IMG/VR virus record: IMGVR_UViG_3300009703_004110
Span: 268,271 to 332,270 of that record
DNA: 64,000 nt
Reading direction: 5' to 3' (one strand)
Of the stretch, positions 4,026 to 49,466 are shown in pieces. A model generated the notes under the pieces. The model ran no database searches, was not told the origin of the DNA, and worked only from the letters and a program-made list of their open reading frames with translations. Position numbers and translations under genes: made by a program. The number at the start of each line of letters is the position of its first letter. Position 1 is the first letter of the stretch.

Positions 4026-4207
4026 TGGTAGGGGTTAGAAGACTCGAACTTCTTTGCGCCATAATAGTCCAACTCCAACTTCATGTTGCATATCGATCGC
4101 TTTGCAACTTCCATTCTTGCTGAAAACGAGCCGCCACATCACCCGTTCCTAGGTTGGGTATTGCGCACACTCTTATGGTTCGTTTTACACATATAAACTA
4201 AACCCCT
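4026..4207 (-). ncRNA. tRNA-like RNA with an insert of about 110 nt replacing the anticodon loop
   Basis: acceptor AGGGGTT/AACCCCT+ACCA, D arm GTTT/AAAC, T arm AGAAG-TTCGAGT-CTTCT, CCATAA/TTATGG closing the insert. Confidence 0.7.
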
Positions 4208-6358: not shown

Positions 6359-6628
6359 CTATTGATTAATTTTAATCCCAAAATCTTGATCATTCTCTGA
6401 GGCTTTTAAGATCTCTATGAATGCATCAATATCTTCTTTACTAGGTGTATAGTCATCGCTACCAATATTTACAACAGTCACAGAAGATAAGTCCATAAGT
6501 GCGGCTAGTAAAATTTTTTCTCTAAGTGGGACACCATTACCATCTGTGTACGGTGAAGCTCTAGACCAGATGCGATCACCTGTCGCATCAAGCCTTCTGC
6601 TGATTTCACATACATTCCGGTCTAACAC
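6359..6628 (-). CDS. hypothetical protein
   Basis: 89-aa ORF in gene-dense orientation. Confidence 0.5.
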   Translation of the reverse strand: MLDRNVCEISRRLDATGDRIWSRASPYTDGNGVPLREKILLAALMDLSSVTVVNIGSDDYTPSKEDIDAFIEILKASENDQDFGIKINQ

Positions 6629-6872
6629 GTCAGAATATATTAGATATAGAATTGTTAGTGACGACTATTCGTGCAGGCATATCATTGACCTGCCCTTCCC
6701 AGATAACTTTCGGATATTCGCTCATTATCTCTCCATATAAATAATCCTAACATAGCTTTTTAAGACTACATCAGGACATTGAATCAAGACCTCTCCATTA
6801 CTAGATAGACAACGCTAACCAACTCAGCGCAAAAGAGTGTAAGTCTATAGTGGGTATTTCTACCGTCTTGAA

Positions 6873-7780: not shown

Positions 7781-8078
7781 TTAGTCTTTCTCTCCAACCA
7801 ACTACAAATTCTTCTCCGTATGTATCACGAATAATAAACTCCAATTTATTGATTGTTCGATCAAGCTTCCAATTATGCTTAGTAGCATTTTTCAGAAAAT
7901 GAATCCAGTCTGGCATCATACCGTGTTCTTTTAGGGACCATACAATTGTTTCGAGATCAATCCCTTTCTCGCTTACAAATCTAAATGCGCCTCTTACAAT
8001 CTTTATACCGTCGTCAGTTTCGCCCACAATTTCAAAATGAGGCTTTGTCTTTTTCTTTCTACCCATGACGACCCCCAA
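7767..8078 (-). CDS. hypothetical protein, weak resemblance to the AlaRS helical motif
   Basis: GAFRFVSEKGIDLE..PDW..F resembles AFKLYDTYGFP..VD..GF. Confidence 0.5.
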   Translation of the reverse strand: MGVVMGRKKKTKPHFEIVGETDDGIKIVRGAFRFVSEKGIDLETIVWSLKEHGMMPDWIHFLKNATKHNWKLDRTINKLEFIIRDTYGEEFVVGWRERLNAAL

Positions 8079-8260
8079 GGATCGTACTTTGGATAGAGGT
8101 TAGGCTGCTTCCCGCTGTGTCATAACTTCTCCCTATCTAAAATTTTAGTCGCCAAAAACTCCCGGGCTTCTGTCGTGGCGGTCGATGCTGGGTCTCTCAC
8201 CCATCCAATTGAATCCCTTAATTTACCCCGGTAATGAGCACCTGCTTTCGCAGACTAAAA

Positions 8261-8335
8261 TGGTAGCCGATGACGGATTCGAACCGCCGACCTTCGCTTT
8301 GTAAAAGCGACACTCTCCCGCTGAGTTAATCGGCC
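8261..8335 (-). tRNA. tRNA-Val(TAC)
   Basis: TCGCT-TTTACAA-AGCGA, ACCA end. Confidence 0.93.
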
Positions 8336-8384
8336 AGATACCATGATTTCTATTTCTACTAATAATACCAAAAGAAAGCAATTT

Positions 8385-9140
8385 TTAATTATCTATTTTT
8401 TCTTGGCCCCAATACCATGTGCTATGCGACTCTGCCTTGAACCGCTCTTTGCTTTTGCTATTTATATGATTAATTCTTTCGTTGTATAGATATTCTAAGT
8501 AACCCTTTGGATCTCTTCGACTATTATAACTTCTACCGGTAGTAGAAACTTTAGTAATGCCGCCTAGAACCATTGGCAAAACATTTTCTGGACAATTATT
8601 TATTGTATAGGTTATTACCTCTACGTTTTTTGATCTTGCAATAATATCCCATGCGCTGCCAGGAAGGTTGCCGGCTGCTAAGTTTCTATGAACCCAATCG
8701 CCATTACTTCCTGATGTAGCGTACGTCTTTATATAATATAGCTTACCCGAATCTGGTAGCAAATCTTTATCTAACGCCCTTATTGCAACACCCTTTCTAA
8801 ACTCGGAAGAAAAGCCAAAGCCTCTCTTCTTTGCCGCAAGGAATAGCTTATCCAAATAAGCCCTACAAACATCGGGATGAGAATCTAGCATTCTTGAGAA
8901 CATATCTAAGAATAGCCGCGAAGCACCATAGTGACCAGTGTCAGCTAGTAAGCCCTTGCGAATTAGAAAGTCTACACCAGGATCTTCTGGAACTTTCCAA
9001 TCATGCTTTAAGCTAATTTCCTTAGGAAAAGAATCAGTTAGTATCTTTGCGTCTTTCATCTCTCTAATGCCGATCATTAAGACCGCATTTATATTATCTA
9101 ACTGATCTTGCGTTAATTCAATAGATATTTTATCAGACAT
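8385..9140 (-). CDS. hypothetical helical protein (possible paralog of 21780-22505)
   Basis: 251 aa; segment INNCPENVLPMVLG resembles IERAPLDKLPFLLG. Confidence 0.65.
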   Translation of the reverse strand: MSDKISIELTQDQLDNINAVLMIGIREMKDAKILTDSFPKEISLKHDWKVPEDPGVDFLIRKGLLADTGHYGASRLFLDMFSRMLDSHPDVCRAYLDKLFLAAKKRGFGFSSEFRKGVAIRALDKDLLPDSGKLYYIKTYATSGSNGDWVHRNLAAGNLPGSAWDIIARSKNVEVITYTINNCPENVLPMVLGGITKVSTTGRSYNSRRDPKGYLEYLYNERINHINSKSKERFKAESHSTWYWGQEKIDN

Positions 9141-9174
9141 TCTTCCTCTTGTTATTCGGCTAATATGCCGAGCC

Positions 9175-9522
9175 TTACAATGCTTTGCATATGAATCCTG
9201 ACGGCATCTTTTCGTTTTTTAATGCAAACTTTAAAATTGCAATTATAGAGGCACGGAAAGAAGCGTGAGAACCTTTTGGTATTTCATCTATTATATAGAG
9301 CTGTTGCTCCGATCGTTTTAAATTATGAGCCCTTCCGCTTTCAAAAATAAAGGTATTATTTATGTAATCGTATTTACCTGTTGCGGTGATGACTCTTAAT
9401 GACTTTGCATTTATTTTGGTAATTATAGCTGGATGATATGAGCAATTAGTTCTGCCCATAGCACCTTCAAGGTATAAGACTATATCACCTACTTGGATTT
9501 CTCTTCCAGTTACATCAGTCAT
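9175..9522 (-). CDS. hypothetical protein
   Basis: 115 aa, MTDVTGREIQVGDIV N-terminus typical of small phage proteins. Confidence 0.65.
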   Translation of the reverse strand: MTDVTGREIQVGDIVLYLEGAMGRTNCSYHPAIITKINAKSLRVITATGKYDYINNTFIFESGRAHNLKRSEQQLYIIDEIPKGSHASFRASIIAILKFALKNEKMPSGFICKAL

Positions 9523-9533
9523 GCTACTTCCTA

Positions 9534-9630
9534 TGGAGGCAGGCTGGGAGTCGAACCACGAGCAGCATAGGGTATGAACCTAGCCAGCCCAATCCCGAAG
9601 GATAACCGGGGCTATTAAGCTTTTCCTGCA
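9534..9630 (-). tRNA. atypical tRNA (CAT anticodon) with an inserted UUCG hairpin in the D region
   Basis: TAGG-TTCATAC-CCTA arm, TTCGACT T loop with a weak stem, GCAGG/CCTGC acceptor, TCCA end. Confidence 0.55.
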
Positions 9631-9667
9631 TGGAAGCGGGTGCCAGAATTGAACTGATTCACCCACT
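9631..9667 (-). ncRNA. tRNA minihelix (acceptor stem plus T arm only)
   Basis: AGTGGGTG-AA-TCAG-TTCAATT-CTGG-CACCCGCT-TCCA. Confidence 0.6.
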
Positions 9668-9671
9668 ATAA

Positions 9672-10283
9672 CTATTTAAAATTATACTTAGCCTTAATCT
9701 CCAAATCAAGAGACGGTATACGAATATGCTGAATCATTCCGTGACTCTTTGCTTCTTCAGGAGTCAGCCACCAATCTGCGTGACCGCGATTGTGAGTCTC
9801 GGTTAGAAAATGCTCTTCATCTTTGCCACAGTTTCTTGCCATTCTTCTGTATACAAGCTGGTTAAGTCTTTCGGTTTCTGCGGCACCAGCTTTTATTTCC
9901 TCAACCTTACCCCATTCCATACTTGAAACATCATGAATTAAGACAGTACTATTGGGTCCGGCAAAACGCATACCATCCTGCCCACAAGTCAAGAGGATAG
10001 CTCCACAACTCATAGCCTTACCTTCAACAATTGTTGCTACAGGCAAAGAGGCTGACTTAATACAATCCATCATAGCAAGCAAAGAATATACTTGGCCGCC
10101 ATATGAGTCAATTACAATTGGGATAACAGGCTGCCCTGTGCCATGAGCCTCTTCCATACTTTCAGTAAATTTCTTAACCGCATCTTCATTAAATTTATTA
10201 ACGCGGATAATTACCGGAGGTATAACCAAATCTTTTGGCTTACGTACAGTTAAAAGAGGGTCAATCTTGCAGGTCGCTCTCAT
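9672..10283 (-). CDS. clpP: ClpP-like serine protease
   Basis: IDSYGG, AMSCGA (catalytic Ser), LIHD, WWLTPEEA. Confidence 0.9.
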   Translation of the reverse strand: MRATCKIDPLLTVRKPKDLVIPPVIIRVNKFNEDAVKKFTESMEEAHGTGQPVIPIVIDSYGGQVYSLLAMMDCIKSASLPVATIVEGKAMSCGAILLTCGQDGMRFAGPNSTVLIHDVSSMEWGKVEEIKAGAAETERLNQLVYRRMARNCGKDEEHFLTETHNRGHADWWLTPEEAKSHGMIQHIRIPSLDLEIKAKYNFK

Positions 10284-11165
10284 CGCTTTCTCCCTTTGTA
10301 TTTTCTGTCAAAGCTTGCTAATTTTTGCAAGTCAATATTGGCAGGAGAATTCCTCATCTTCCCGCCATCAATAAATAAGTCTAATGCCTGATCTCTAGTG
10401 ATAATAGCCGTAGACTTATCATCTTTGCGCGGGCCCCATCCTAAGCGTAGAAGGAAGTTTAGCATAGCACCTGGATCGACTCCAGAGTCCATGTAACTAA
10501 TCATAGATGCAGCACCGTCCCGTTTTACTTAACTTCTTCTTATCTTTAAACAGAAGGCCGGTATGGGCGTATTGCGGGACTTTAATTCCTGACATTGGAA
10601 TAGTGCTCAAAAAATAATAAAGCACAATCTGCTTACCAGTATTCTTCTGGTGGTCAACACCGCGAATAACATAATTTACACCAATATCAAAGTCGATATC
10701 GTCACAGACATTGGCAAAGTTATATGTTGGCGATCCATTAGACTTAATTAAAACCATATTTGAAATATAATCAAAGTCTGATTGTCCAATCTTAATATCT
10801 CCAGCAATATTATCATGCCATGATTTGCAAGGAAAGTTGTCCCAATCCTGGAAATCTAAAACTACTGCTCCATCGTCTAATCGCTTTGCGAAACCGCCAT
10901 CAATCAGACACTCTGCTACGTGCTGATAAAGATCGAATCGGTTACTCTGATAAACGAGCATATCATAGTCAAGACTGAGCCAGTCCATAACTTTTAAAAT
11001 ATCATCAACTTTGCTTTGATCATTTCTTGCAATATCTGTATCATCAATTCTTAAGATGAATTTTCCGTCTGTAGCCCGAGCTGCCAACCAATTAAAGTAA
11101 GCGGTACGAGCCGTCCCCATATGCATATCACCCGTGGGGCTCGGTGCTATTCTTGTATTAAACAT
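10280..11165 (-). pseudogene. gltX: short glutamate--tRNA ligase (GluRS/GluQ-like catalytic domain) split by a 1-nt frameshift
   Basis: RIAPSPTG-HMGT, LRIDDTD, VIRGVDH; removing one A at 10523-10526 restores KLSKRDGA and joins the two ORFs (about 294 aa). Confidence 0.85.
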
Positions 11166-11385
11166 GCCTACACTCATAATGAAAGTCATCCAAAGTCATA
11201 GCCTTATATTCTGTGAACTCCGAATCTTTATTTAATTTATGTGCAGCCAATACAGCGGTATCTTCTTTAAAGGAAGGACCAGCAGTAATGCTCCATAAAC
11301 CAGGGTCATTACTATAAGGATTGCGAGACCAGCTTGCTACAACCCATAGATCGTAAACGCTTACGTCAGCTTCAGGTATTTCCAT
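11158..11385 (-). CDS. hypothetical protein
   Basis: 75-aa ORF with RBS GAGGCGG. Confidence 0.55.
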   Translation of the reverse strand: MEIPEADVSVYDLWVVASWSRNPYSNDPGLWSITAGPSFKEDTAVLAAHKLNKDSEFTEYKAMTLDDFHYECRHV

Positions 11386-11574
11386 TACCGCCTCTCTATC
11401 TGAGTGTTATAGATCTGTTTTTATTTGAATTAATTCCCATCTAGAGGCTCACGTCCTCTTACTCTTGCCTCTCACTGTGATCAAACAGTCCCGGGTGCTT
11501 TACTTCTATTAGATACGTCAGTCGGCATCTAAAGACCTTAAGCCGCTGGTAGCACCGAGGTTCGGTAATCAAAC

Positions 11575-11703
11575 ATGAATAAATATATTACAAAAAAATG
11601 TTTAAATTGTCAAAACGATTTTGACGCATTATTAGAAATACTTTGTCCTACTTGCCATGACGAAGAACACTATCTGAAACAAGACGGCAGATTTAATAGA
11701 TGA
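11575..11703 (+). pseudogene. internally deleted HNH endonuclease remnant (42 aa)
   Basis: MNKYITKKCLNCQNDF fused directly to LEILCPTCHDEEH; ends at the tRNA-Leu 3' end. Confidence 0.65.
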
Positions 11704-11705
11704 TA

Positions 11706-11781
11706 TGGTAGCTCTGGTGGGAGTCGAACCCACACTGTAGCGGTTTTAAGCCGCTTGTCTCTGCCGTTGGACTACAGAGCC
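11706..11781 (-). tRNA. tRNA-Leu(TAA), short variable loop
   Basis: AGCGG-CTTAAAA-CCGCT, ACCA end. Confidence 0.9.
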
Positions 11782-11834
11782 ATAACGTACTTCTTACGTT
11801 ACGAATAGATAAAAATCAAATTTCTACTCTATTC

Positions 11835-11864
11835 ATTACCTTCTTGTTTTTATTTTTAAGTTAA
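11835..11864 (-). promoter_or_regulatory. putative phage promoter, class A motif
   Basis: TTAACT-TAAAAATAAAAACAAGAA-GGTAAT upstream of tRNA-Leu. Confidence 0.55.
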
Positions 11865-11928
11865 GGCGTAACTCATACTGAATTATACGGTAAGCCAAGG
11901 TTTTGCCGCCGAAGCGGCTGCGGAGAAC

Positions 11929-13278
11929 CTAAAGGGTCTTTAGCAGGCTATCAGACTCAGTGGCTTCCGCCACATCATTATCATCAAGCCTTTCAAAATC
12001 CGCATCAGGTACTTCTACATATCCCTGACCGATCATGCTTCTAGAAACTAGATCAATCTCCATTTCTCCGCCGCACCATTCGCAAGCCCTCTCTCCCGAG
12101 ACATAATGGCTGCCGGTACTTTTCTGGCAGACTTCACAGATGGTCGCATAAGCAAGAAGCTGATCATCACCGTTATTATCCATTGGCTCAGGATCAACTA
12201 AGGTAAGTTGTGAGCCACTGGACTTTGTAGTAGTAATTGAAGACTTAGACCACTTCTCTCTATTCTCCTTATTGATTTCTGTTTCAATCTGGCGAAGACT
12301 CTTTCCATCTCCATCCTTAATCAACCAGAAGTCTGGAGTACTAGAGCCAGGATATTCCCTATACTTAGGTAGCACTAACGGCTTATTGTAAGTAATAAGC
12401 TCTTGTCGATCCATCTTAATAGACATATGCCAGCCATCGGCACTCATCTTGGATCTTGGACCAAAGTAGTTTGAGCCGCCATTGTGACCAACTGAGGTCA
12501 TACCAAACTGACGCATAGTAACGGCGCCCTTTAGAGGCTCATCAGCGCACTCAAATCTCCACATTGAAAACATTTTTTCACGCATTTCATCGCGCTTGCT
12601 TTCATCAGGAAACATCTTCTCCAGAGCTTCTTCGTTAGTAGTAGATCCGTCCACTAAGAAAAATGGGTTGCAGCCCAGAGAGGCAATAAACGGATGATAA
12701 TCTTCAAAGCGCCTTGTGTTTCTTGGAACTAGAATCCTGCTAATTCCGAGTCCATAAGGTTCGATTAATTGATGTAATACAGTAAATGTATACTGCTGTT
12801 GCAATCCATCTTTGGTGCACATATCATTTAACTTATACCACTCTCGGTCGTCTCTGTCCAGCTTCATTCCAAGCCAATGCTGCATATAATCATTGGTTGC
12901 ATTATACGCACAACAGGCAACAGTTCTGTTCTTAGTAATTCTATGTGGAATGTCATTAATATCCATAGCGATGGCAGGAATATACCCTTTTCCGTGAGCA
13001 TATTTCCATACCTCATCCTTCGGAGATAACGTAACTTTCCAGTGGTCAAAATTACCACGTTCAAAAATCTCACCCATTTTATATTCGCTGAGAATCTTTA
13101 TCTCTTCGAAATCGGGATCAGTTCTGTCCGTCATAACAATAGCGGCATATCCAGTCTTCTTTGGCGGGACATACTTCTTTGGCCTCGGTGTGTTACGAGA
13201 GGTGTTGCCATAATAGCCACCATACCCTCCATATCCTCCGCCTGAGCTACCTTGTGATCTACCGTTATTCATCTTCAC
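11929..13278 (-). CDS. putative papain-fold cysteine protease with C-terminal zinc ribbon
   Basis: CAYNATNDYMQ resembles the Josephin/C39 catalytic helix (CAxHxLNNLLQ); later VGH; CEVC..CEWC; G/Y-rich N-terminus. Confidence 0.45.
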   Translation of the reverse strand: MKMNNGRSQGSSGGGYGGYGGYYGNTSRNTPRPKKYVPPKKTGYAAIVMTDRTDPDFEEIKILSEYKMGEIFERGNFDHWKVTLSPKDEVWKYAHGKGYIPAIAMDINDIPHRITKNRTVACCAYNATNDYMQHWLGMKLDRDDREWYKLNDMCTKDGLQQQYTFTVLHQLIEPYGLGISRILVPRNTRRFEDYHPFIASLGCNPFFLVDGSTTNEEALEKMFPDESKRDEMREKMFSMWRFECADEPLKGAVTMRQFGMTSVGHNGGSNYFGPRSKMSADGWHMSIKMDRQELITYNKPLVLPKYREYPGSSTPDFWLIKDGDGKSLRQIETEINKENREKWSKSSITTTKSSGSQLTLVDPEPMDNNGDDQLLAYATICEVCQKSTGSHYVSGERACEWCGGEMEIDLVSRSMIGQGYVEVPDADFERLDDNDVAEATESDSLLKTL

Positions 13279-35305: not shown

Positions 35306-35381
35306 TGGCACGCTGTAAGGGATTCGAACCCTTGACGCGGAGGTCTAGAATCTCCCGCTCTGACCGCTGAGCTAACAGCGC
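35306..35381 (-). tRNA. amber suppressor tRNA (anticodon CTA)
   Basis: canonical 76-nt numbering gives GGAGA-TTCTAGA-CCTCC; A31-C39 mismatch, G73, CCA end. Confidence 0.85.
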
Positions 35382-38714: not shown

Positions 38715-39482
38715 TTACAGAAACCTACTAACGTACTCTCTATCTTCTTTAAAGAGAGGAATCTCCCAGTCGATAGTCCATCTATTACGTTTGGCTATCA
38801 CAGTTTCTTTAGCCCCATGCTTCATAAAAGTCACAGGTTCTTCAAAGCTTTTACGAGTTACAGTAAATCCTTTTTGAAAATGACTTGGGACGTCTTCCCA
38901 CGGAGTACCATTATTTCTCAACATTTCTTTCATCTGCAAAACAGTTCTACCATTACATTCTTTATGAGAAAAATAATGCCTTGCATACATTGAAACAGAA
39001 TTGCGCAAAGCGTCTTGCTGTCTCCATACAAAAGCATTAACAACTTCATGCTCAGGAAGATTCCAGAACCTAGAATCAAATTTTGGTCTAGAGTCTGCAA
39101 GGCTTGGATCGCTCATAACTAATGCTGCATAAAACTCAACTGCTACAGCAGAAGCAATAACGCTATTCATCTTTCTGGTTTTATAACCAAAATAAGGCTG
39201 AGTCTGCTCTGATTCAGTATCAGTTATTAGAAAGGATATTTCATCAGACTGGACGTAAGCCATCTTACAACCTTGGATTTCTTGGCACCCAACAATGGCA
39301 CCTACAGCCATAGCCAAAACAAATTTTTCATTCCAAGGAGAATTAGCTTCTTTCTTTAGACTCTTAGTAAATTTACTAAAATTCTTTCCATCTACTCGGC
39401 CAATAACAGGAACGCCACTAACTAGCTTAAAGTTAGTTTGCTTCTCGTAACCCTTCATCCTATTTTCTAATGTATCAAACAT
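38715..39482 (-). CDS. thg1: tRNA(His) guanylyltransferase Thg1 / Thg1-like protein
   Basis: RMKGYE, RVDGKNFSKFT, YVQSDEIS, FDSR, WRQQDA.RNS. Confidence 0.93.
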   Translation of the reverse strand: MFDTLENRMKGYEKQTNFKLVSGVPVIGRVDGKNFSKFTKSLKKEANSPWNEKFVLAMAVGAIVGCQEIQGCKMAYVQSDEISFLITDTESEQTQPYFGYKTRKMNSVIASAVAVEFYAALVMSDPSLADSRPKFDSRFWNLPEHEVVNAFVWRQQDALRNSVSMYARHYFSHKECNGRTVLQMKEMLRNNGTPWEDVPSHFQKGFTVTRKSFEEPVTFMKHGAKETVIAKRNRWTIDWEIPLFKEDREYVSRFL

Positions 39483-45034: not shown

Positions 45035-45167
45035 TGGTCGTGTCGCAGAGGATTCGAACCTACATTGACCCGGCGATTAAACCCGGGAATGTCCAAGTGA
45101 TAGAGGGCACGCAGAGAGACTTGCTAATCGCAGCAAGATCATTTACCATTTTCACTACACGTCACGA
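45035..45167 (-). ncRNA. tRNA-like RNA with an expanded multi-hairpin core
   Basis: TCGTG/CACGA+CCA, AGG-TTCGAAT-CCT, D-loop-like AATGGTAAA, hairpins CTTGCT/AGCAAG and CCCGG/CCGGG. Confidence 0.6.
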
Positions 45168-45888: not shown

Positions 45889-45964
45889 TGGTAGAGTACC
45901 TTGGATTCGAACCAAGAACGCCGACGTCACAGGACGGAATGATAACCAATTTCAACAATACTCC
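45889..45964 (-). tRNA. tRNA-His(GTG) with A73 and no encoded G-1
   Basis: CCGTC-CTGTGAC-GTCGG; GGAGTAT/GTACTCT-A-CCA; base -1 is T. Confidence 0.85.
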
Positions 45965-47964: not shown

Positions 47965-48047
47965 TGGAGCGGGTGACGAGAATCGAACTCGCCATGTTTA
48001 AAACGCCTGCTTGGAAGGCAGGTTCCCCACCTTGGGGACTCACCCGC
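47965..48047 (-). tRNA. tRNA-Gly(TCC) with an enlarged variable region
   Basis: CCTGC-CTTCCAA-GCAGG, U73, 13-nt variable region. Confidence 0.85.
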
Positions 48048-48943: not shown

Positions 48944-49389
48944 GCCGTTACCTGCAAGATATCAAGATAGAACAAAATACTTTCCTTGTCTTTATTACCA
49001 AAAGCGATATCAATCACATGGTATCGGTCTGTCAGTCGAATGGAGTATTGATCGCCCTTTAGAAATAACATTAGAGTTGCCAAATATTACTCGGCTGCCG
49101 TCTCTACTCGGTCTTAATATAACATTAGAAGTTCCAACCCAAAAATCAAGGGACTTTTGCAAATGATTGTCAAAGAGTCAATCTCTACAAGCCTCTCCGC
49201 AAATCTGATATAATCACCCGGGCTATAGCTATTTACTGAACCACTAATCACTTCGGCATGTGTTCCACCAATCTGTGGGTGAATCTTACACTTACCTCTA
49301 CTGCACGGGTTCTTTGGCTTGCTATAGAAAAACTTTCGTAATATACTTCCTATAAGATCCATCGACCTTCCGTGCGGCTATATGTTAAA

Positions 49390-49466
49390 TGGCTGGGGTA
49401 GTAGGGTTCGAACCTACAAACCTTCCGGTTCAAAGCCGGATGCTCCACCAGTTGAGCTATACCCCA
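49390..49466 (-). tRNA. tRNA-Gln(TTG)
   Basis: T1-A72, TCCGG-CTTTGAA-CCGGA, GCCA end. Confidence 0.93.

What the first reader, a model, noticed from the sequence alone, without database searches (positions are those of the whole stretch)
9631..9667. Apparent natural 37-nt tRNA minihelix gene
Seen: an 8-bp acceptor-like stem AGTGGGTG/CACCCGCT, a 2-nt linker, T arm TCAG-TTCAATT-CTGG and TCCA, squeezed between the clpP stop and the next tRNA. Both acceptor strands are kept while the D and anticodon arms are cleanly absent. Established: minihelices are substrates for RNase P, the CCA-adding enzyme, EF-Tu and some synthetases. Inference: a processing signal or mRNA 3' stabiliser, a decoy, or a substrate of the truncated synthetases.
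Basis: partly seen in the sequence, partly recalled or inferred. Interest (0 to 1): 0.65.

Follow-up and report, generated by a model that had tools for sequence, protein, structure and literature searches.

The report
tRNA-derived minihelix in huge phage
A 37-base stub of a glycine-type tRNA gene (acceptor stem, T arm and CCA end only) sits right after clpP in the tRNA-rich translation island of a phage of more than 330 kb. It is real and tRNA-derived and is probably cut out of the transcript like a tRNA, but nothing yet shows that it has a job of its own.

Summary
On the minus strand, 9667..9631 folds into an 8-bp acceptor stem, a 2-nt linker, a 4-bp T stem with a canonical 7-nt T loop, then U-CCA (z = -3.3). 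A strict descriptor finds it once in the 332-kb genome and in none of 30 simulated genomes.

Its closest relative is the acceptor/T-arm part of the phage's own Sec-like "8/4" tRNA-Gly(UCC), at 30 of 37 identical bases. It is therefore a tRNA-gene derivative that lost nucleotides 10-48, not a chance hairpin.

It starts 4 nt after the clpP stop, spaced like the 24 CCA-encoding tRNAs that sit between same-strand genes here.

ARAGORN and Rfam both reject it.

The element lies exactly at a synteny breakpoint. The relatives whose junction can be read (ClpP 63% and 61% identical) lack it, no diverged homologue was found, and no RNA data exist.

Best reading: a top-half tRNA relic that bacterial RNase P would still cut, so it punctuates the polycistronic transcript. 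An independent function (decoy, charged RNA) is possible but unsupported. The neighbouring truncated GluRS gives it no support.

The parts
9631..9667 (-). tRNA acceptor/T-arm minihelix: acceptor 5' strand 9667-9660, linker AA 9659-9658, T stem 9657-9654 / 9646-9643, T loop 9653-9647, acceptor 3' strand 9642-9635, discriminator U 9634, CCA 9633-9631
   Evidence: Sequence; MFE fold, z = -3.31; unique under the strict descriptor, 0 of 30 simulated genomes; 30/37 identical to the acceptor+T-arm part of tRNA-Gly(UCC); covariance model R1 finds only this site in the genome
9672..10283 (-). clpP-like protease gene; TAG stop at 9674-9672, 4 nt upstream of the minihelix
   Evidence: ORF list; Pfam CLP_protease E = 7e-27; NCBIfam ClpP models
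9534..9630 (-). Degenerate tRNA-like element abutting the minihelix. It has a 5-bp terminal stem GCAGG/CCTGC, an anticodon-arm-like hairpin with a UUCAUAC loop (CAU) resembling the phage tRNA-Met arm, a T loop TTCGACT whose stem has only 3 of 5 pairs, and a U-CCA end.
   Evidence: Sequence; no ARAGORN or Rfam tRNA call; fold z = -0.23; best local match is tRNA-Met(CAU); no single deletion yields a tRNA
9175..9522 (-). Downstream gene (DUF7205, 115 aa); AGGAAG ribosome-binding site at 9532-9527 directly after the CCA of the tRNA-like element
   Evidence: ORF list; Pfam family from the contig annotation; no relatives apart from itself
9681..9709 (-). Sigma-70-like promoter match (TTGATT, 17 nt, TATAAT) inside the clpP 3' end; it would start transcription a few bases before the minihelix
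   Evidence: Consensus scan, 10 of 12 matches; 15 sites in the 4-kb region against 10.1 +/- 3.4 in shuffles, so not significant on its own
47965..48047 (-). tRNA-Gly(UCC) with a Sec-like 8/4 architecture; the closest paralogue and likely kind of ancestor of the minihelix
   Evidence: ARAGORN; Rfam tRNA-Sec model 44.5 bits with an 8-bp acceptor, 6-bp D stem and 4-bp T stem; alignment to the minihelix

Best explanation
The element is the 'top half' (acceptor stem plus T arm plus encoded NCCA) of a glycine-type tRNA gene. It is related to the phage's own 8/4-type tRNA-Gly(UCC) and has lost nucleotides 10-48. It lies in a one-strand, tightly packed array of genes and tRNAs in the translation island of a huge phage, at the point where synteny with relatives ends. 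Inferred mechanism: it is transcribed with its neighbours. It keeps the 12-bp coaxial stack, the T loop, a U at -1 and an N73-CCA end, so host RNase P should cleave 5' of A9667 as it cleaves synthetic minihelices. This cut separates the clpP message from the downstream DUF7205 message and releases a 37-nt CCA-ended RNA once the 3' side is trimmed. On this reading it works as a tRNA-type processing mark, whether selected for that or merely tolerated. The small RNA is then most likely a by-product. Shown: the structure, its tRNA origin, its position and its uniqueness. Inferred: transcription, cleavage and the effect on the mRNAs.
For: The structure is present and significant. It is 30/37 identical to the acceptor+T part of tRNA-Gly(UCC), against 26 for the next best tRNA. 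It has the same 8+4 = 12-bp geometry as that tRNA. All 24 minus-strand tRNAs of the genome encode CCA. They sit 0-50 nt after a same-strand stop codon and 11-30 nt before the next start, the same spacing as here. Every ORF of 450 aa or more in the genome is on this strand, which implies long co-directional transcripts. There is no U-run terminator at the helix. At least three other elements in the island keep an acceptor stem, T arm and CCA but have aberrant cores. So the top half is the part retained here. From established knowledge (my recall, not tested here): bacterial RNase P, the CCA-adding enzyme and EF-Tu accept acceptor/T-arm minihelices, and RNase P prefers U at -1 and pairs with the 3' CCA.
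Against: There is no RNA evidence: no RNA run holds this genome, and the laid runs are DNA contigs only. There is no conservation: relatives with ClpP 63% and 61% identical have the next ORF 5 and 34 nt after clpP, and 14 IMG/VR relatives have no tRNA-like element there. No diverged homologue exists in IMG/VR or the JGI metagenomes. The only other copies are the same strain, with 0-2 differences in 6.6 kb, so covariation cannot be tested. The neighbouring element looks decayed, which suggests a region of tRNA erosion. The host and its type of RNase P are unknown.
Confidence: 0.5

Rival explanations
1. Inert recombination or deletion scar. A fragment of a tRNA gene was left at a mosaic junction of the phage genome. 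It is neither selected nor of consequence for expression, and its intact pairing reflects recent origin.
For: It lies exactly at a synteny breakpoint. The upstream 74-aa ORF plus clpP is conserved in L017 (93% identity over 30 aa), but the downstream gene is unrelated. A related contig in the source sample diverges from the window exactly at 9666. The abutting element is a degenerate tRNA-like piece. tRNA 3' fragments are common in mobile-element DNA (L018, L027-L038). It is absent from the relatives.
Against: Both acceptor strands are kept with 12 of 12 pairs intact, although the element differs from its closest paralogue at 7 of 37 positions. Relative to that paralogue, the T stem is one pair shorter and the acceptor stem one pair longer, so the 12-bp length and the CCA register are kept. 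This is weak evidence from two sequences. Even a scar with this fold should be an RNase P substrate, so 'inert' is unlikely in the strict sense.
Confidence: 0.3
2. A trans-acting minihelix RNA with its own function. Candidates are a decoy or sponge for host toxins or nucleases that attack tRNA acceptor ends, a substrate or regulator of the phage's own tRNA enzymes (CCA-adding enzyme, Thg1-like protein, EF-Tu, RNA ligase), or an aminoacylated non-decoding carrier.
For: The island encodes EF-Tu, EF-G, several synthetases, a Thg1-like enzyme, RlaP, a T4-type RNA ligase and a PolyA_pol/CCA-adding family protein. The phage therefore invests heavily in tRNA upkeep. The helix keeps the geometry these enzymes read. 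A promoter-like site lies just upstream.
Against: It is a single copy in a single lineage, with no conservation and no expression data. In the RNase P register the first pair is A:U and the Gly determinants (G1:C72, C2:G71, G3:C70; recalled knowledge) are shifted by one, with C2:G71 replaced by U.G. Charging by GlyRS is therefore doubtful. The acceptor stem does not resemble the phage tRNA-Glu genes, so the truncated GluRS is not an obvious partner.
Confidence: 0.1
3. Not a minihelix by descent. Instead it is the 3' part of a tRNA (an attP-type fragment) whose upstream bases pair with the acceptor 3' strand by chance, or a chance hairpin, terminator or coding extension of clpP.
For: Pattern scans show that tRNA-Gly 3' fragments are frequent, and their G-rich stretch before the T arm can partly pair with CACCC. 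IMG/VR classes the record as a provirus.
Against: By my estimate from pairing odds, the chance of 7-8 perfect pairs directly beside a T arm is about 0.005, and none arose in 30 simulated genomes. The 5' strand matches the 5' end of tRNA-Gly(UCC) at 7 of 8 bases, including A8. No integrase is adjacent, and the site is internal to the viral record. No U-run follows. The genome uses code 11, and two TAG codons 3 nt apart close the clpP frame.
Confidence: 0.05

Closest known systems
Synthetic acceptor/T-arm minihelices used as minimal substrates of RNase P, CCA-adding enzyme, EF-Tu and some synthetases (laboratory constructs; recalled knowledge. Papers on minimal RNase P substrates turned up, e.g. 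PMC11221534 and PMC6614837, but I did not read them.)
   Same: Same architecture: 12 stacked pairs, a 7-nt T loop, a discriminator and CCA, about 35 nt.
   Different: Those are designed by deleting nt 8-48 of a tRNA in vitro. This one is encoded in a natural genome, is split 8+4 rather than 7+5, and has not been tested as a substrate.
8/4 and 9/3 tRNAs (allo-tRNAs, Sec-like tRNAs), including 8/4 tRNA-Ser and tRNA-His in phage tRNA clusters (Mukai et al., PMC5389517)
   Same: Same split of the 12-bp acceptor branch into a longer acceptor stem and a 4-bp T stem; occurrence in phage tRNA clusters; the closest paralogue here is such a tRNA.
   Different: Those are complete, decoding tRNAs with D and anticodon arms. 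The element here has neither.
tRNA-like processing marks: mitochondrial 'tRNA punctuation' and the tRNA-like mascRNA cut from MALAT1 by RNase P and RNase Z and then CCA-tailed (recalled knowledge)
   Same: A tRNA-shaped fold inside a longer transcript directs RNase P cleavage and so defines mRNA ends. The released small RNA need not decode.
   Different: Those systems are eukaryotic or organellar and are experimentally shown. mascRNA retains an anticodon-like arm and gains CCA after transcription, whereas here the CCA is encoded and the fold is only the top half.
Truncated tRNA genes and tRNA 3' fragments in phages and integrative elements (att-site duplicates; examples seen here: L018, L028)
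   Same: Partial tRNA-Gly sequence with T arm and CACCCGC-U-CCA end, outside a complete tRNA gene.
   Different: Those are contiguous 3' pieces without the 5' acceptor strand, next to full tRNA copies or integration modules. The element here has both strands and an internal deletion.
Small stable RNAs encoded in the phage T4 tRNA cluster (species 1 and 2 RNAs; recalled knowledge, not found in the paper library)
   Same: Non-decoding RNAs co-transcribed and co-processed with phage tRNAs, with tRNA-like termini; function unknown.
   Different: They are about 120-140 nt, not minimal helices, and no sequence relation was tested.

Membership tests
Canonical tRNA (Rfam RF00005 / ARAGORN) | Cloverleaf with D arm, anticodon arm and anticodon; score at or above the family threshold (29 bits) | tested here: not met
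   No ARAGORN call. No RF00005 match at 9534-9667 at the gathering score or at E<=10. Only 2 nt lie between the acceptor and T stems.
tRNA acceptor/T-arm minihelix | 12 coaxially stackable pairs from the 5' end to the T loop | tested here: met
   8 + 4 pairs, all standard or G.U, in both the MFE and centroid folds
tRNA acceptor/T-arm minihelix | 7-nt T loop with T54 T55 C56 R57 A58, closed by G53:C61 | tested here: met
   Loop TTCAATT closed by G:C; this motif is what makes the site unique
tRNA acceptor/T-arm minihelix | Single-stranded N73-CCA 3' end | tested here: met
   U-CCA at 9634-9631, encoded as in all 24 tRNAs of the genome
tRNA acceptor/T-arm minihelix | Accepted as a substrate by RNase P, the CCA-adding enzyme or a synthetase | not testable with these tools
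   Needs enzyme assays or end-mapped RNA; no RNA run holds the genome
tRNA-derived pseudogene or relic | Sequence descent from a tRNA gene | tested here: met
   30/37 identity to the acceptor+T part of tRNA-Gly(UCC), clearly above the other 23 tRNAs (19-26)
tRNA-derived pseudogene or relic | No purifying selection (not conserved; stems decay) | tested here: inconclusive
   Absent from relatives, but the stems are intact and the only other copies are the same strain
Intrinsic terminator | GC-rich hairpin followed by a U run | tested here: not met
   No terminator-like site on the minus strand in 8000-12000; the helix is followed by CCA-UGCAGG
attP / tRNA 3'-fragment of an integrative element | Contiguous 3' piece of a host tRNA next to an integration module | tested here: not met
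   Both acceptor strands are present with an internal gap. The neighbours are clpP, DUF7205 and a GluRS fragment, not an integrase. Identity to a host tRNA was not tested because the host is unknown.
tmRNA (one- or two-piece) | tRNA-like domain plus tag reading frame and pseudoknots | tested here: not met
   No ARAGORN tmRNA call at default settings and no Rfam tmRNA match. Only a low-threshold permuted call with a nonsensical tag.

The most novel reading that the evidence does not exclude
The phage makes a set of non-decoding 'top-half' tRNA-like RNAs. These are the 37-nt minihelix plus the 97-, 105-, about 127- and 182-nt elements, which keep the acceptor stem, T arm and CCA but have aberrant cores. 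They would act in trans, for example as decoys that soak up host toxins or nucleases aimed at tRNA acceptor ends. Alternatively they could be dedicated substrates or regulators of the phage's own EF-Tu, CCA-adding enzyme, Thg1-like protein and RNA-repair enzymes. That would make this a natural, functional minihelix RNA.
Probability: 0.1. Interest if true: 0.8.

Novelty: new variant of a known kind. Interest (0 to 1): 0.4.

Why it matters
Minihelices are the classic laboratory model for the 'top half' of tRNA and for ideas on how tRNA and the operational RNA code arose. I know of no natural, genome-encoded example ending in CCA, and three full-text searches found none. If this one is expressed and processed, it would show that a phage can use the bare acceptor/T domain as a processing mark, or as a small RNA in its own right. 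Such a top-half RNA would sit beside phage-encoded EF-Tu, a CCA-adding enzyme, a Thg1-like enzyme and RNA-repair genes, where its partners could be tested. If it is only a scar, it still records how tRNA genes erode at mosaic junctions of huge phage genomes. It also warns that tRNA finders miss several tRNA-like elements in such islands.

Tried and rejected
- **Comparative tests.** There was no match to 50,697 phage records.
  - 14 IMG/VR relatives by ClpP (54-60% identity) have neither synteny downstream nor any tRNA.
  - Exact and degenerate pattern scans of IMG/VR gave nothing except one unrelated tRNA-Gly 3' fragment.
  - The DUF7205 neighbour has no relatives.
  - The closest ClpP relative (68%) has no retrievable DNA.
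  - The metagenome pattern scan returned the source contig plus 12 att-type tRNA-Gly fragments, whose 5-bp complementarity was forced by my pattern.
  - Covariance model R1 found only the element itself in the genome and nothing in five related records.
- **Expression.** No RNA run exists. The DNA contigs show no variants in the element.
- **One interrupted tRNA?** No single deletion in the minihelix-plus-neighbour stretch, or in the neighbour alone, gives an ARAGORN tRNA.
- **ARAGORN at lowered thresholds.** With introns or tmRNA allowed it gives only noise, about 200 calls in 77 kb.
- **Rejected readings.**
  - Recoded TAG extending ClpP: code 11 fits, and TAG ends 49 of 273 long ORFs.
  - Terminator.
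  - A second copy elsewhere in the genome.
- **Literature.** Searches found no natural minihelix gene and nothing on the T4 stable RNAs in the held library.

Full report
**What is there**

On the minus strand, 9667..9631 reads AGTGGGTG-AA-TCAG-TTCAATT-CTGG-CACCCGCT-T-CCA. It has 8 acceptor pairs, a 2-nt linker, a 4-bp stem closing a 7-nt loop, and four unpaired 3' bases. The energy is -14.5 kcal/mol, z = -3.31, and 1 of 200 shuffles folds as well. The loop has the T54-T55-C56-R57-A58 signature and a G53:C61 closing pair.

I wrote a descriptor for such helices: a fully paired 7-9 bp stem, a 0-3 nt linker, a 4-5 bp T stem, a TTCRANN loop, then NCCA.
- It finds this site and no other on either strand of the 332,270-bp genome.
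- It finds none in 30 simulated genomes of the same size and dinucleotide make-up.
- Without the loop motif about 1.5 sites per genome arise by chance, so the T loop carries the weight.

**Where it is**

The window is the last 64 kb of an IMG/VR virus record (CheckV completeness 99%, classed as a provirus).
- The same locus occurs on longer contigs of 391 and 420 kb.
- The genome has tail-sheath, prohead-protease and phage DNA-polymerase homologues.
- It uses the standard code.
- Every ORF of 450 aa or more is on the minus strand.
- All 24 credible tRNA genes lie in the last 74 kb on that strand, and all encode CCA.

They are interleaved with translation and tRNA-maintenance genes:
- EF-Tu, EF-G, two full synthetases, ArgRS- and GluRS-like fragments, a Thg1-like enzyme, RlaP and a T4-type RNA ligase;
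- a PolyA_pol/CCA-adding family gene elsewhere in the genome.

Such repertoires are known from huge phages (PMC7162821).

The tRNAs sit 0-50 nt after a same-strand stop codon and 11-30 nt before the next start. The minihelix follows the same rule. The clpP TAG stop is at 9674-9672, and the helix starts 4 nt later.

**What it came from**

I reduced each of the 24 tRNAs to its first 9 and last 28 nucleotides and aligned these to the minihelix. The tRNA-Gly(UCC) at 47965-48047 stands out with 30 of 37 identities; the rest score 19-26.

That tRNA is unusual. Rfam's tRNA-Sec model fits it best (44.5 bits), with an 8-bp acceptor stem, a 6-bp D stem and a 4-bp T stem. This is the 8/4 architecture described for some bacterial and phage tRNAs (PMC5389517).

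The minihelix has the same 8+4 = 12 pairs. Its 5' strand matches the tRNA's 5' end at 7 of 8 bases, including A8.

Chance pairing of a bare 3' fragment is unlikely. By my estimate from pairing odds it is about 0.005, and no case arose in the simulations. The element is therefore best read as a glycine-type tRNA gene that lost nucleotides 10-48.

Relative to the paralogue, the T stem is one pair shorter and the acceptor stem one pair longer at the top (A:U). The 12-bp length and the position of CCA are thus kept. This hints at selection on geometry, but it rests on two sequences and is weak.

**The neighbour**

- ARAGORN makes no call.
- Rfam finds no tRNA match even at E<=10.
- Its fold has z = -0.23.
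- No single internal deletion gives a tRNA.

It does have tRNA-like parts:
- a 5-bp terminal stem;
- a hairpin resembling the anticodon arm of the phage tRNA-Met(CAU);
- a TTCGACT T loop whose stem has 3 of 5 pairs;
- a U-CCA end that runs directly into the ribosome-binding site of the DUF7205 gene.

It looks like an eroded or remodelled tRNA.

**Conservation and expression**

The minihelix is identical in two other assemblies. One is the source contig, and the other differs at 2 of 6,612 bases, so neither is independent.

The next ClpP relatives are 68, 63 and 61% identical.
- The 63% relative (L017) keeps the upstream small ORF (93% identity over 30 aa). Its next gene is unrelated and starts 5 nt after clpP.
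- In the 61% relative the next gene starts 34 nt after clpP.
- The 68% contig has no retrievable DNA.
- A related contig in the source sample diverges from the window exactly at 9666.

The minihelix therefore marks a synteny breakpoint.

No diverged homologue was found.
- 14 IMG/VR relatives have none.
- Pattern scans of IMG/VR and the JGI metagenomes returned only att-type tRNA-Gly 3' fragments.
- A covariance model found nothing in five related records.

No RNA run holds the genome.

**How it most likely works**

Established biochemistry (recalled, not tested here) holds that bacterial RNase P needs only the acceptor/T-arm stack, the T loop and the 3' CCA, and that it prefers U at -1. All of these are present, and both rulers point to the same site 5' of A9667: 12 pairs from the T loop, and the N73-CCA register.

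Transcripts in this one-strand gene array must be long. The element should therefore be cut like the tRNAs around it. That would separate the clpP message from the DUF7205 message and release a 37-nt CCA-ended RNA.

I hold this reading (tRNA relic that acts as a processing mark) at about 0.5. The stricter "inert scar" is at about 0.3, and a trans-acting role at about 0.1.

- That enzyme is a GluRS catalytic core that ends at the KMSKS-like motif.
- The helix does not resemble either phage tRNA-Glu.
- In the RNase P register the glycine determinants are shifted by one pair, so charging by GlyRS is doubtful (inference).

**Wider pattern**

A scan for T arm plus NCCA found three more minus-strand elements in the island that tRNA finders miss:
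- 4026-4207: 182 nt, a perfect 7-bp acceptor stem, a perfect T arm and a D arm, directly after tRNA-Gly(GCC);
- 45035-45166;
- genome 266934-267038: 105 nt, just downstream of tRNA-Ala.

All keep the top half and have odd cores. This fits either serial erosion of tRNA genes or a family in which only the top half matters. It raises the value of end-mapped RNA data for the whole island.

**Verdict**

The structure is real and tRNA-derived, and it is a new variant of a known kind (truncated or tRNA-like elements). The mechanism is plausible but untested, and there is no evidence of selection. Interest is moderate.

Noticed in passing
window 47965-48047 (-): tRNA-Gly(UCC) of 83 nt with a Sec-like 8/4 architecture: 8-bp acceptor, 6-bp D stem, 4-bp T stem, U73. 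Rfam tRNA-Sec scores 44.5 bits, just under the gathering score of 47. The paper describing 8/4 tRNAs reports phage examples for Ser and His only (PMC5389517).
   Followed up: partly
window 4026-4207 (-), 45035-45166 (-); genome 266934-267038 (-): Three further elements have an acceptor stem, canonical T arm and NCCA but oversized, non-canonical cores (182, about 127-132 and 105 nt). ARAGORN misses all three, and Rfam misses the two inside the window (the third was not scanned). Two sit within about 45 nt downstream of canonical tRNAs (Gly-GCC, Ala). Their nature is unexplained: eroded tRNAs, tRNAs with insertions, or non-decoding tRNA-like RNAs.
   Followed up: partly
   Followed up: yes
window 10497-11189 (-): A 230-aa GluRS-like protein holds only the catalytic Rossmann core (HIGH-like HMGT to a C-terminal KLSK). 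It lacks the anticodon-binding half and is shorter than GluQRS/YadB.
   Followed up: partly
window 770-57270 (-): Dense translation and tRNA-maintenance island: class I synthetase (894 aa), EF-Tu, class II D/K/N synthetase, ArgRS-like fragment, EF-G, Thg1-like enzyme, RlaP, T4-type RNA ligase, HD_4 hydrolase, NAMPT, NUDIX and an NAD-kinase domain. A PolyA_pol/CCA-adding family gene lies at genome 179355-179723.
   Followed up: partly
window 35306-35381 (-): A tRNA with anticodon CUA (amber-suppressor type; ARAGORN labels it Pyl) in a genome where code 11 fits and TAG ends 49 of 273 long ORFs, including clpP.
   Followed up: no
window 38715-39482 (-) and 45889-45964 (-): A Thg1-family gene occurs together with a tRNA-His that has A73 and a G.U first pair. 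This suggests addition of G-1 after transcription, which is unusual for a bacterial system.
   Followed up: no
window 49373-49449 (+): ARAGORN's only plus-strand call, tRNA-Arg(UCG), is the antisense image of tRNA-Gln(UUG) at 49390-49466 and is probably spurious. The genome then lacks recognisable Arg, Asn and Trp tRNAs.
   Followed up: no
whole genome G000: All 48 ORFs of 450 aa or more lie on one strand of the 332-kb record. The same locus occurs on 391-kb and 420-kb contigs, so the IMG/VR 'provirus' trimming may have cut off part of a larger phage genome.
   Followed up: partly
L038:2998-3030 and 6611-6643 (-): An unrelated metagenome contig carries two copies, 3.6 kb apart, of a repeat of about 90 nt or more. 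Each copy ends in a tRNA-Gly-like T arm plus CACCCGC-U-CCA. They are probably att-type duplicates of an integrated element.
   Followed up: no
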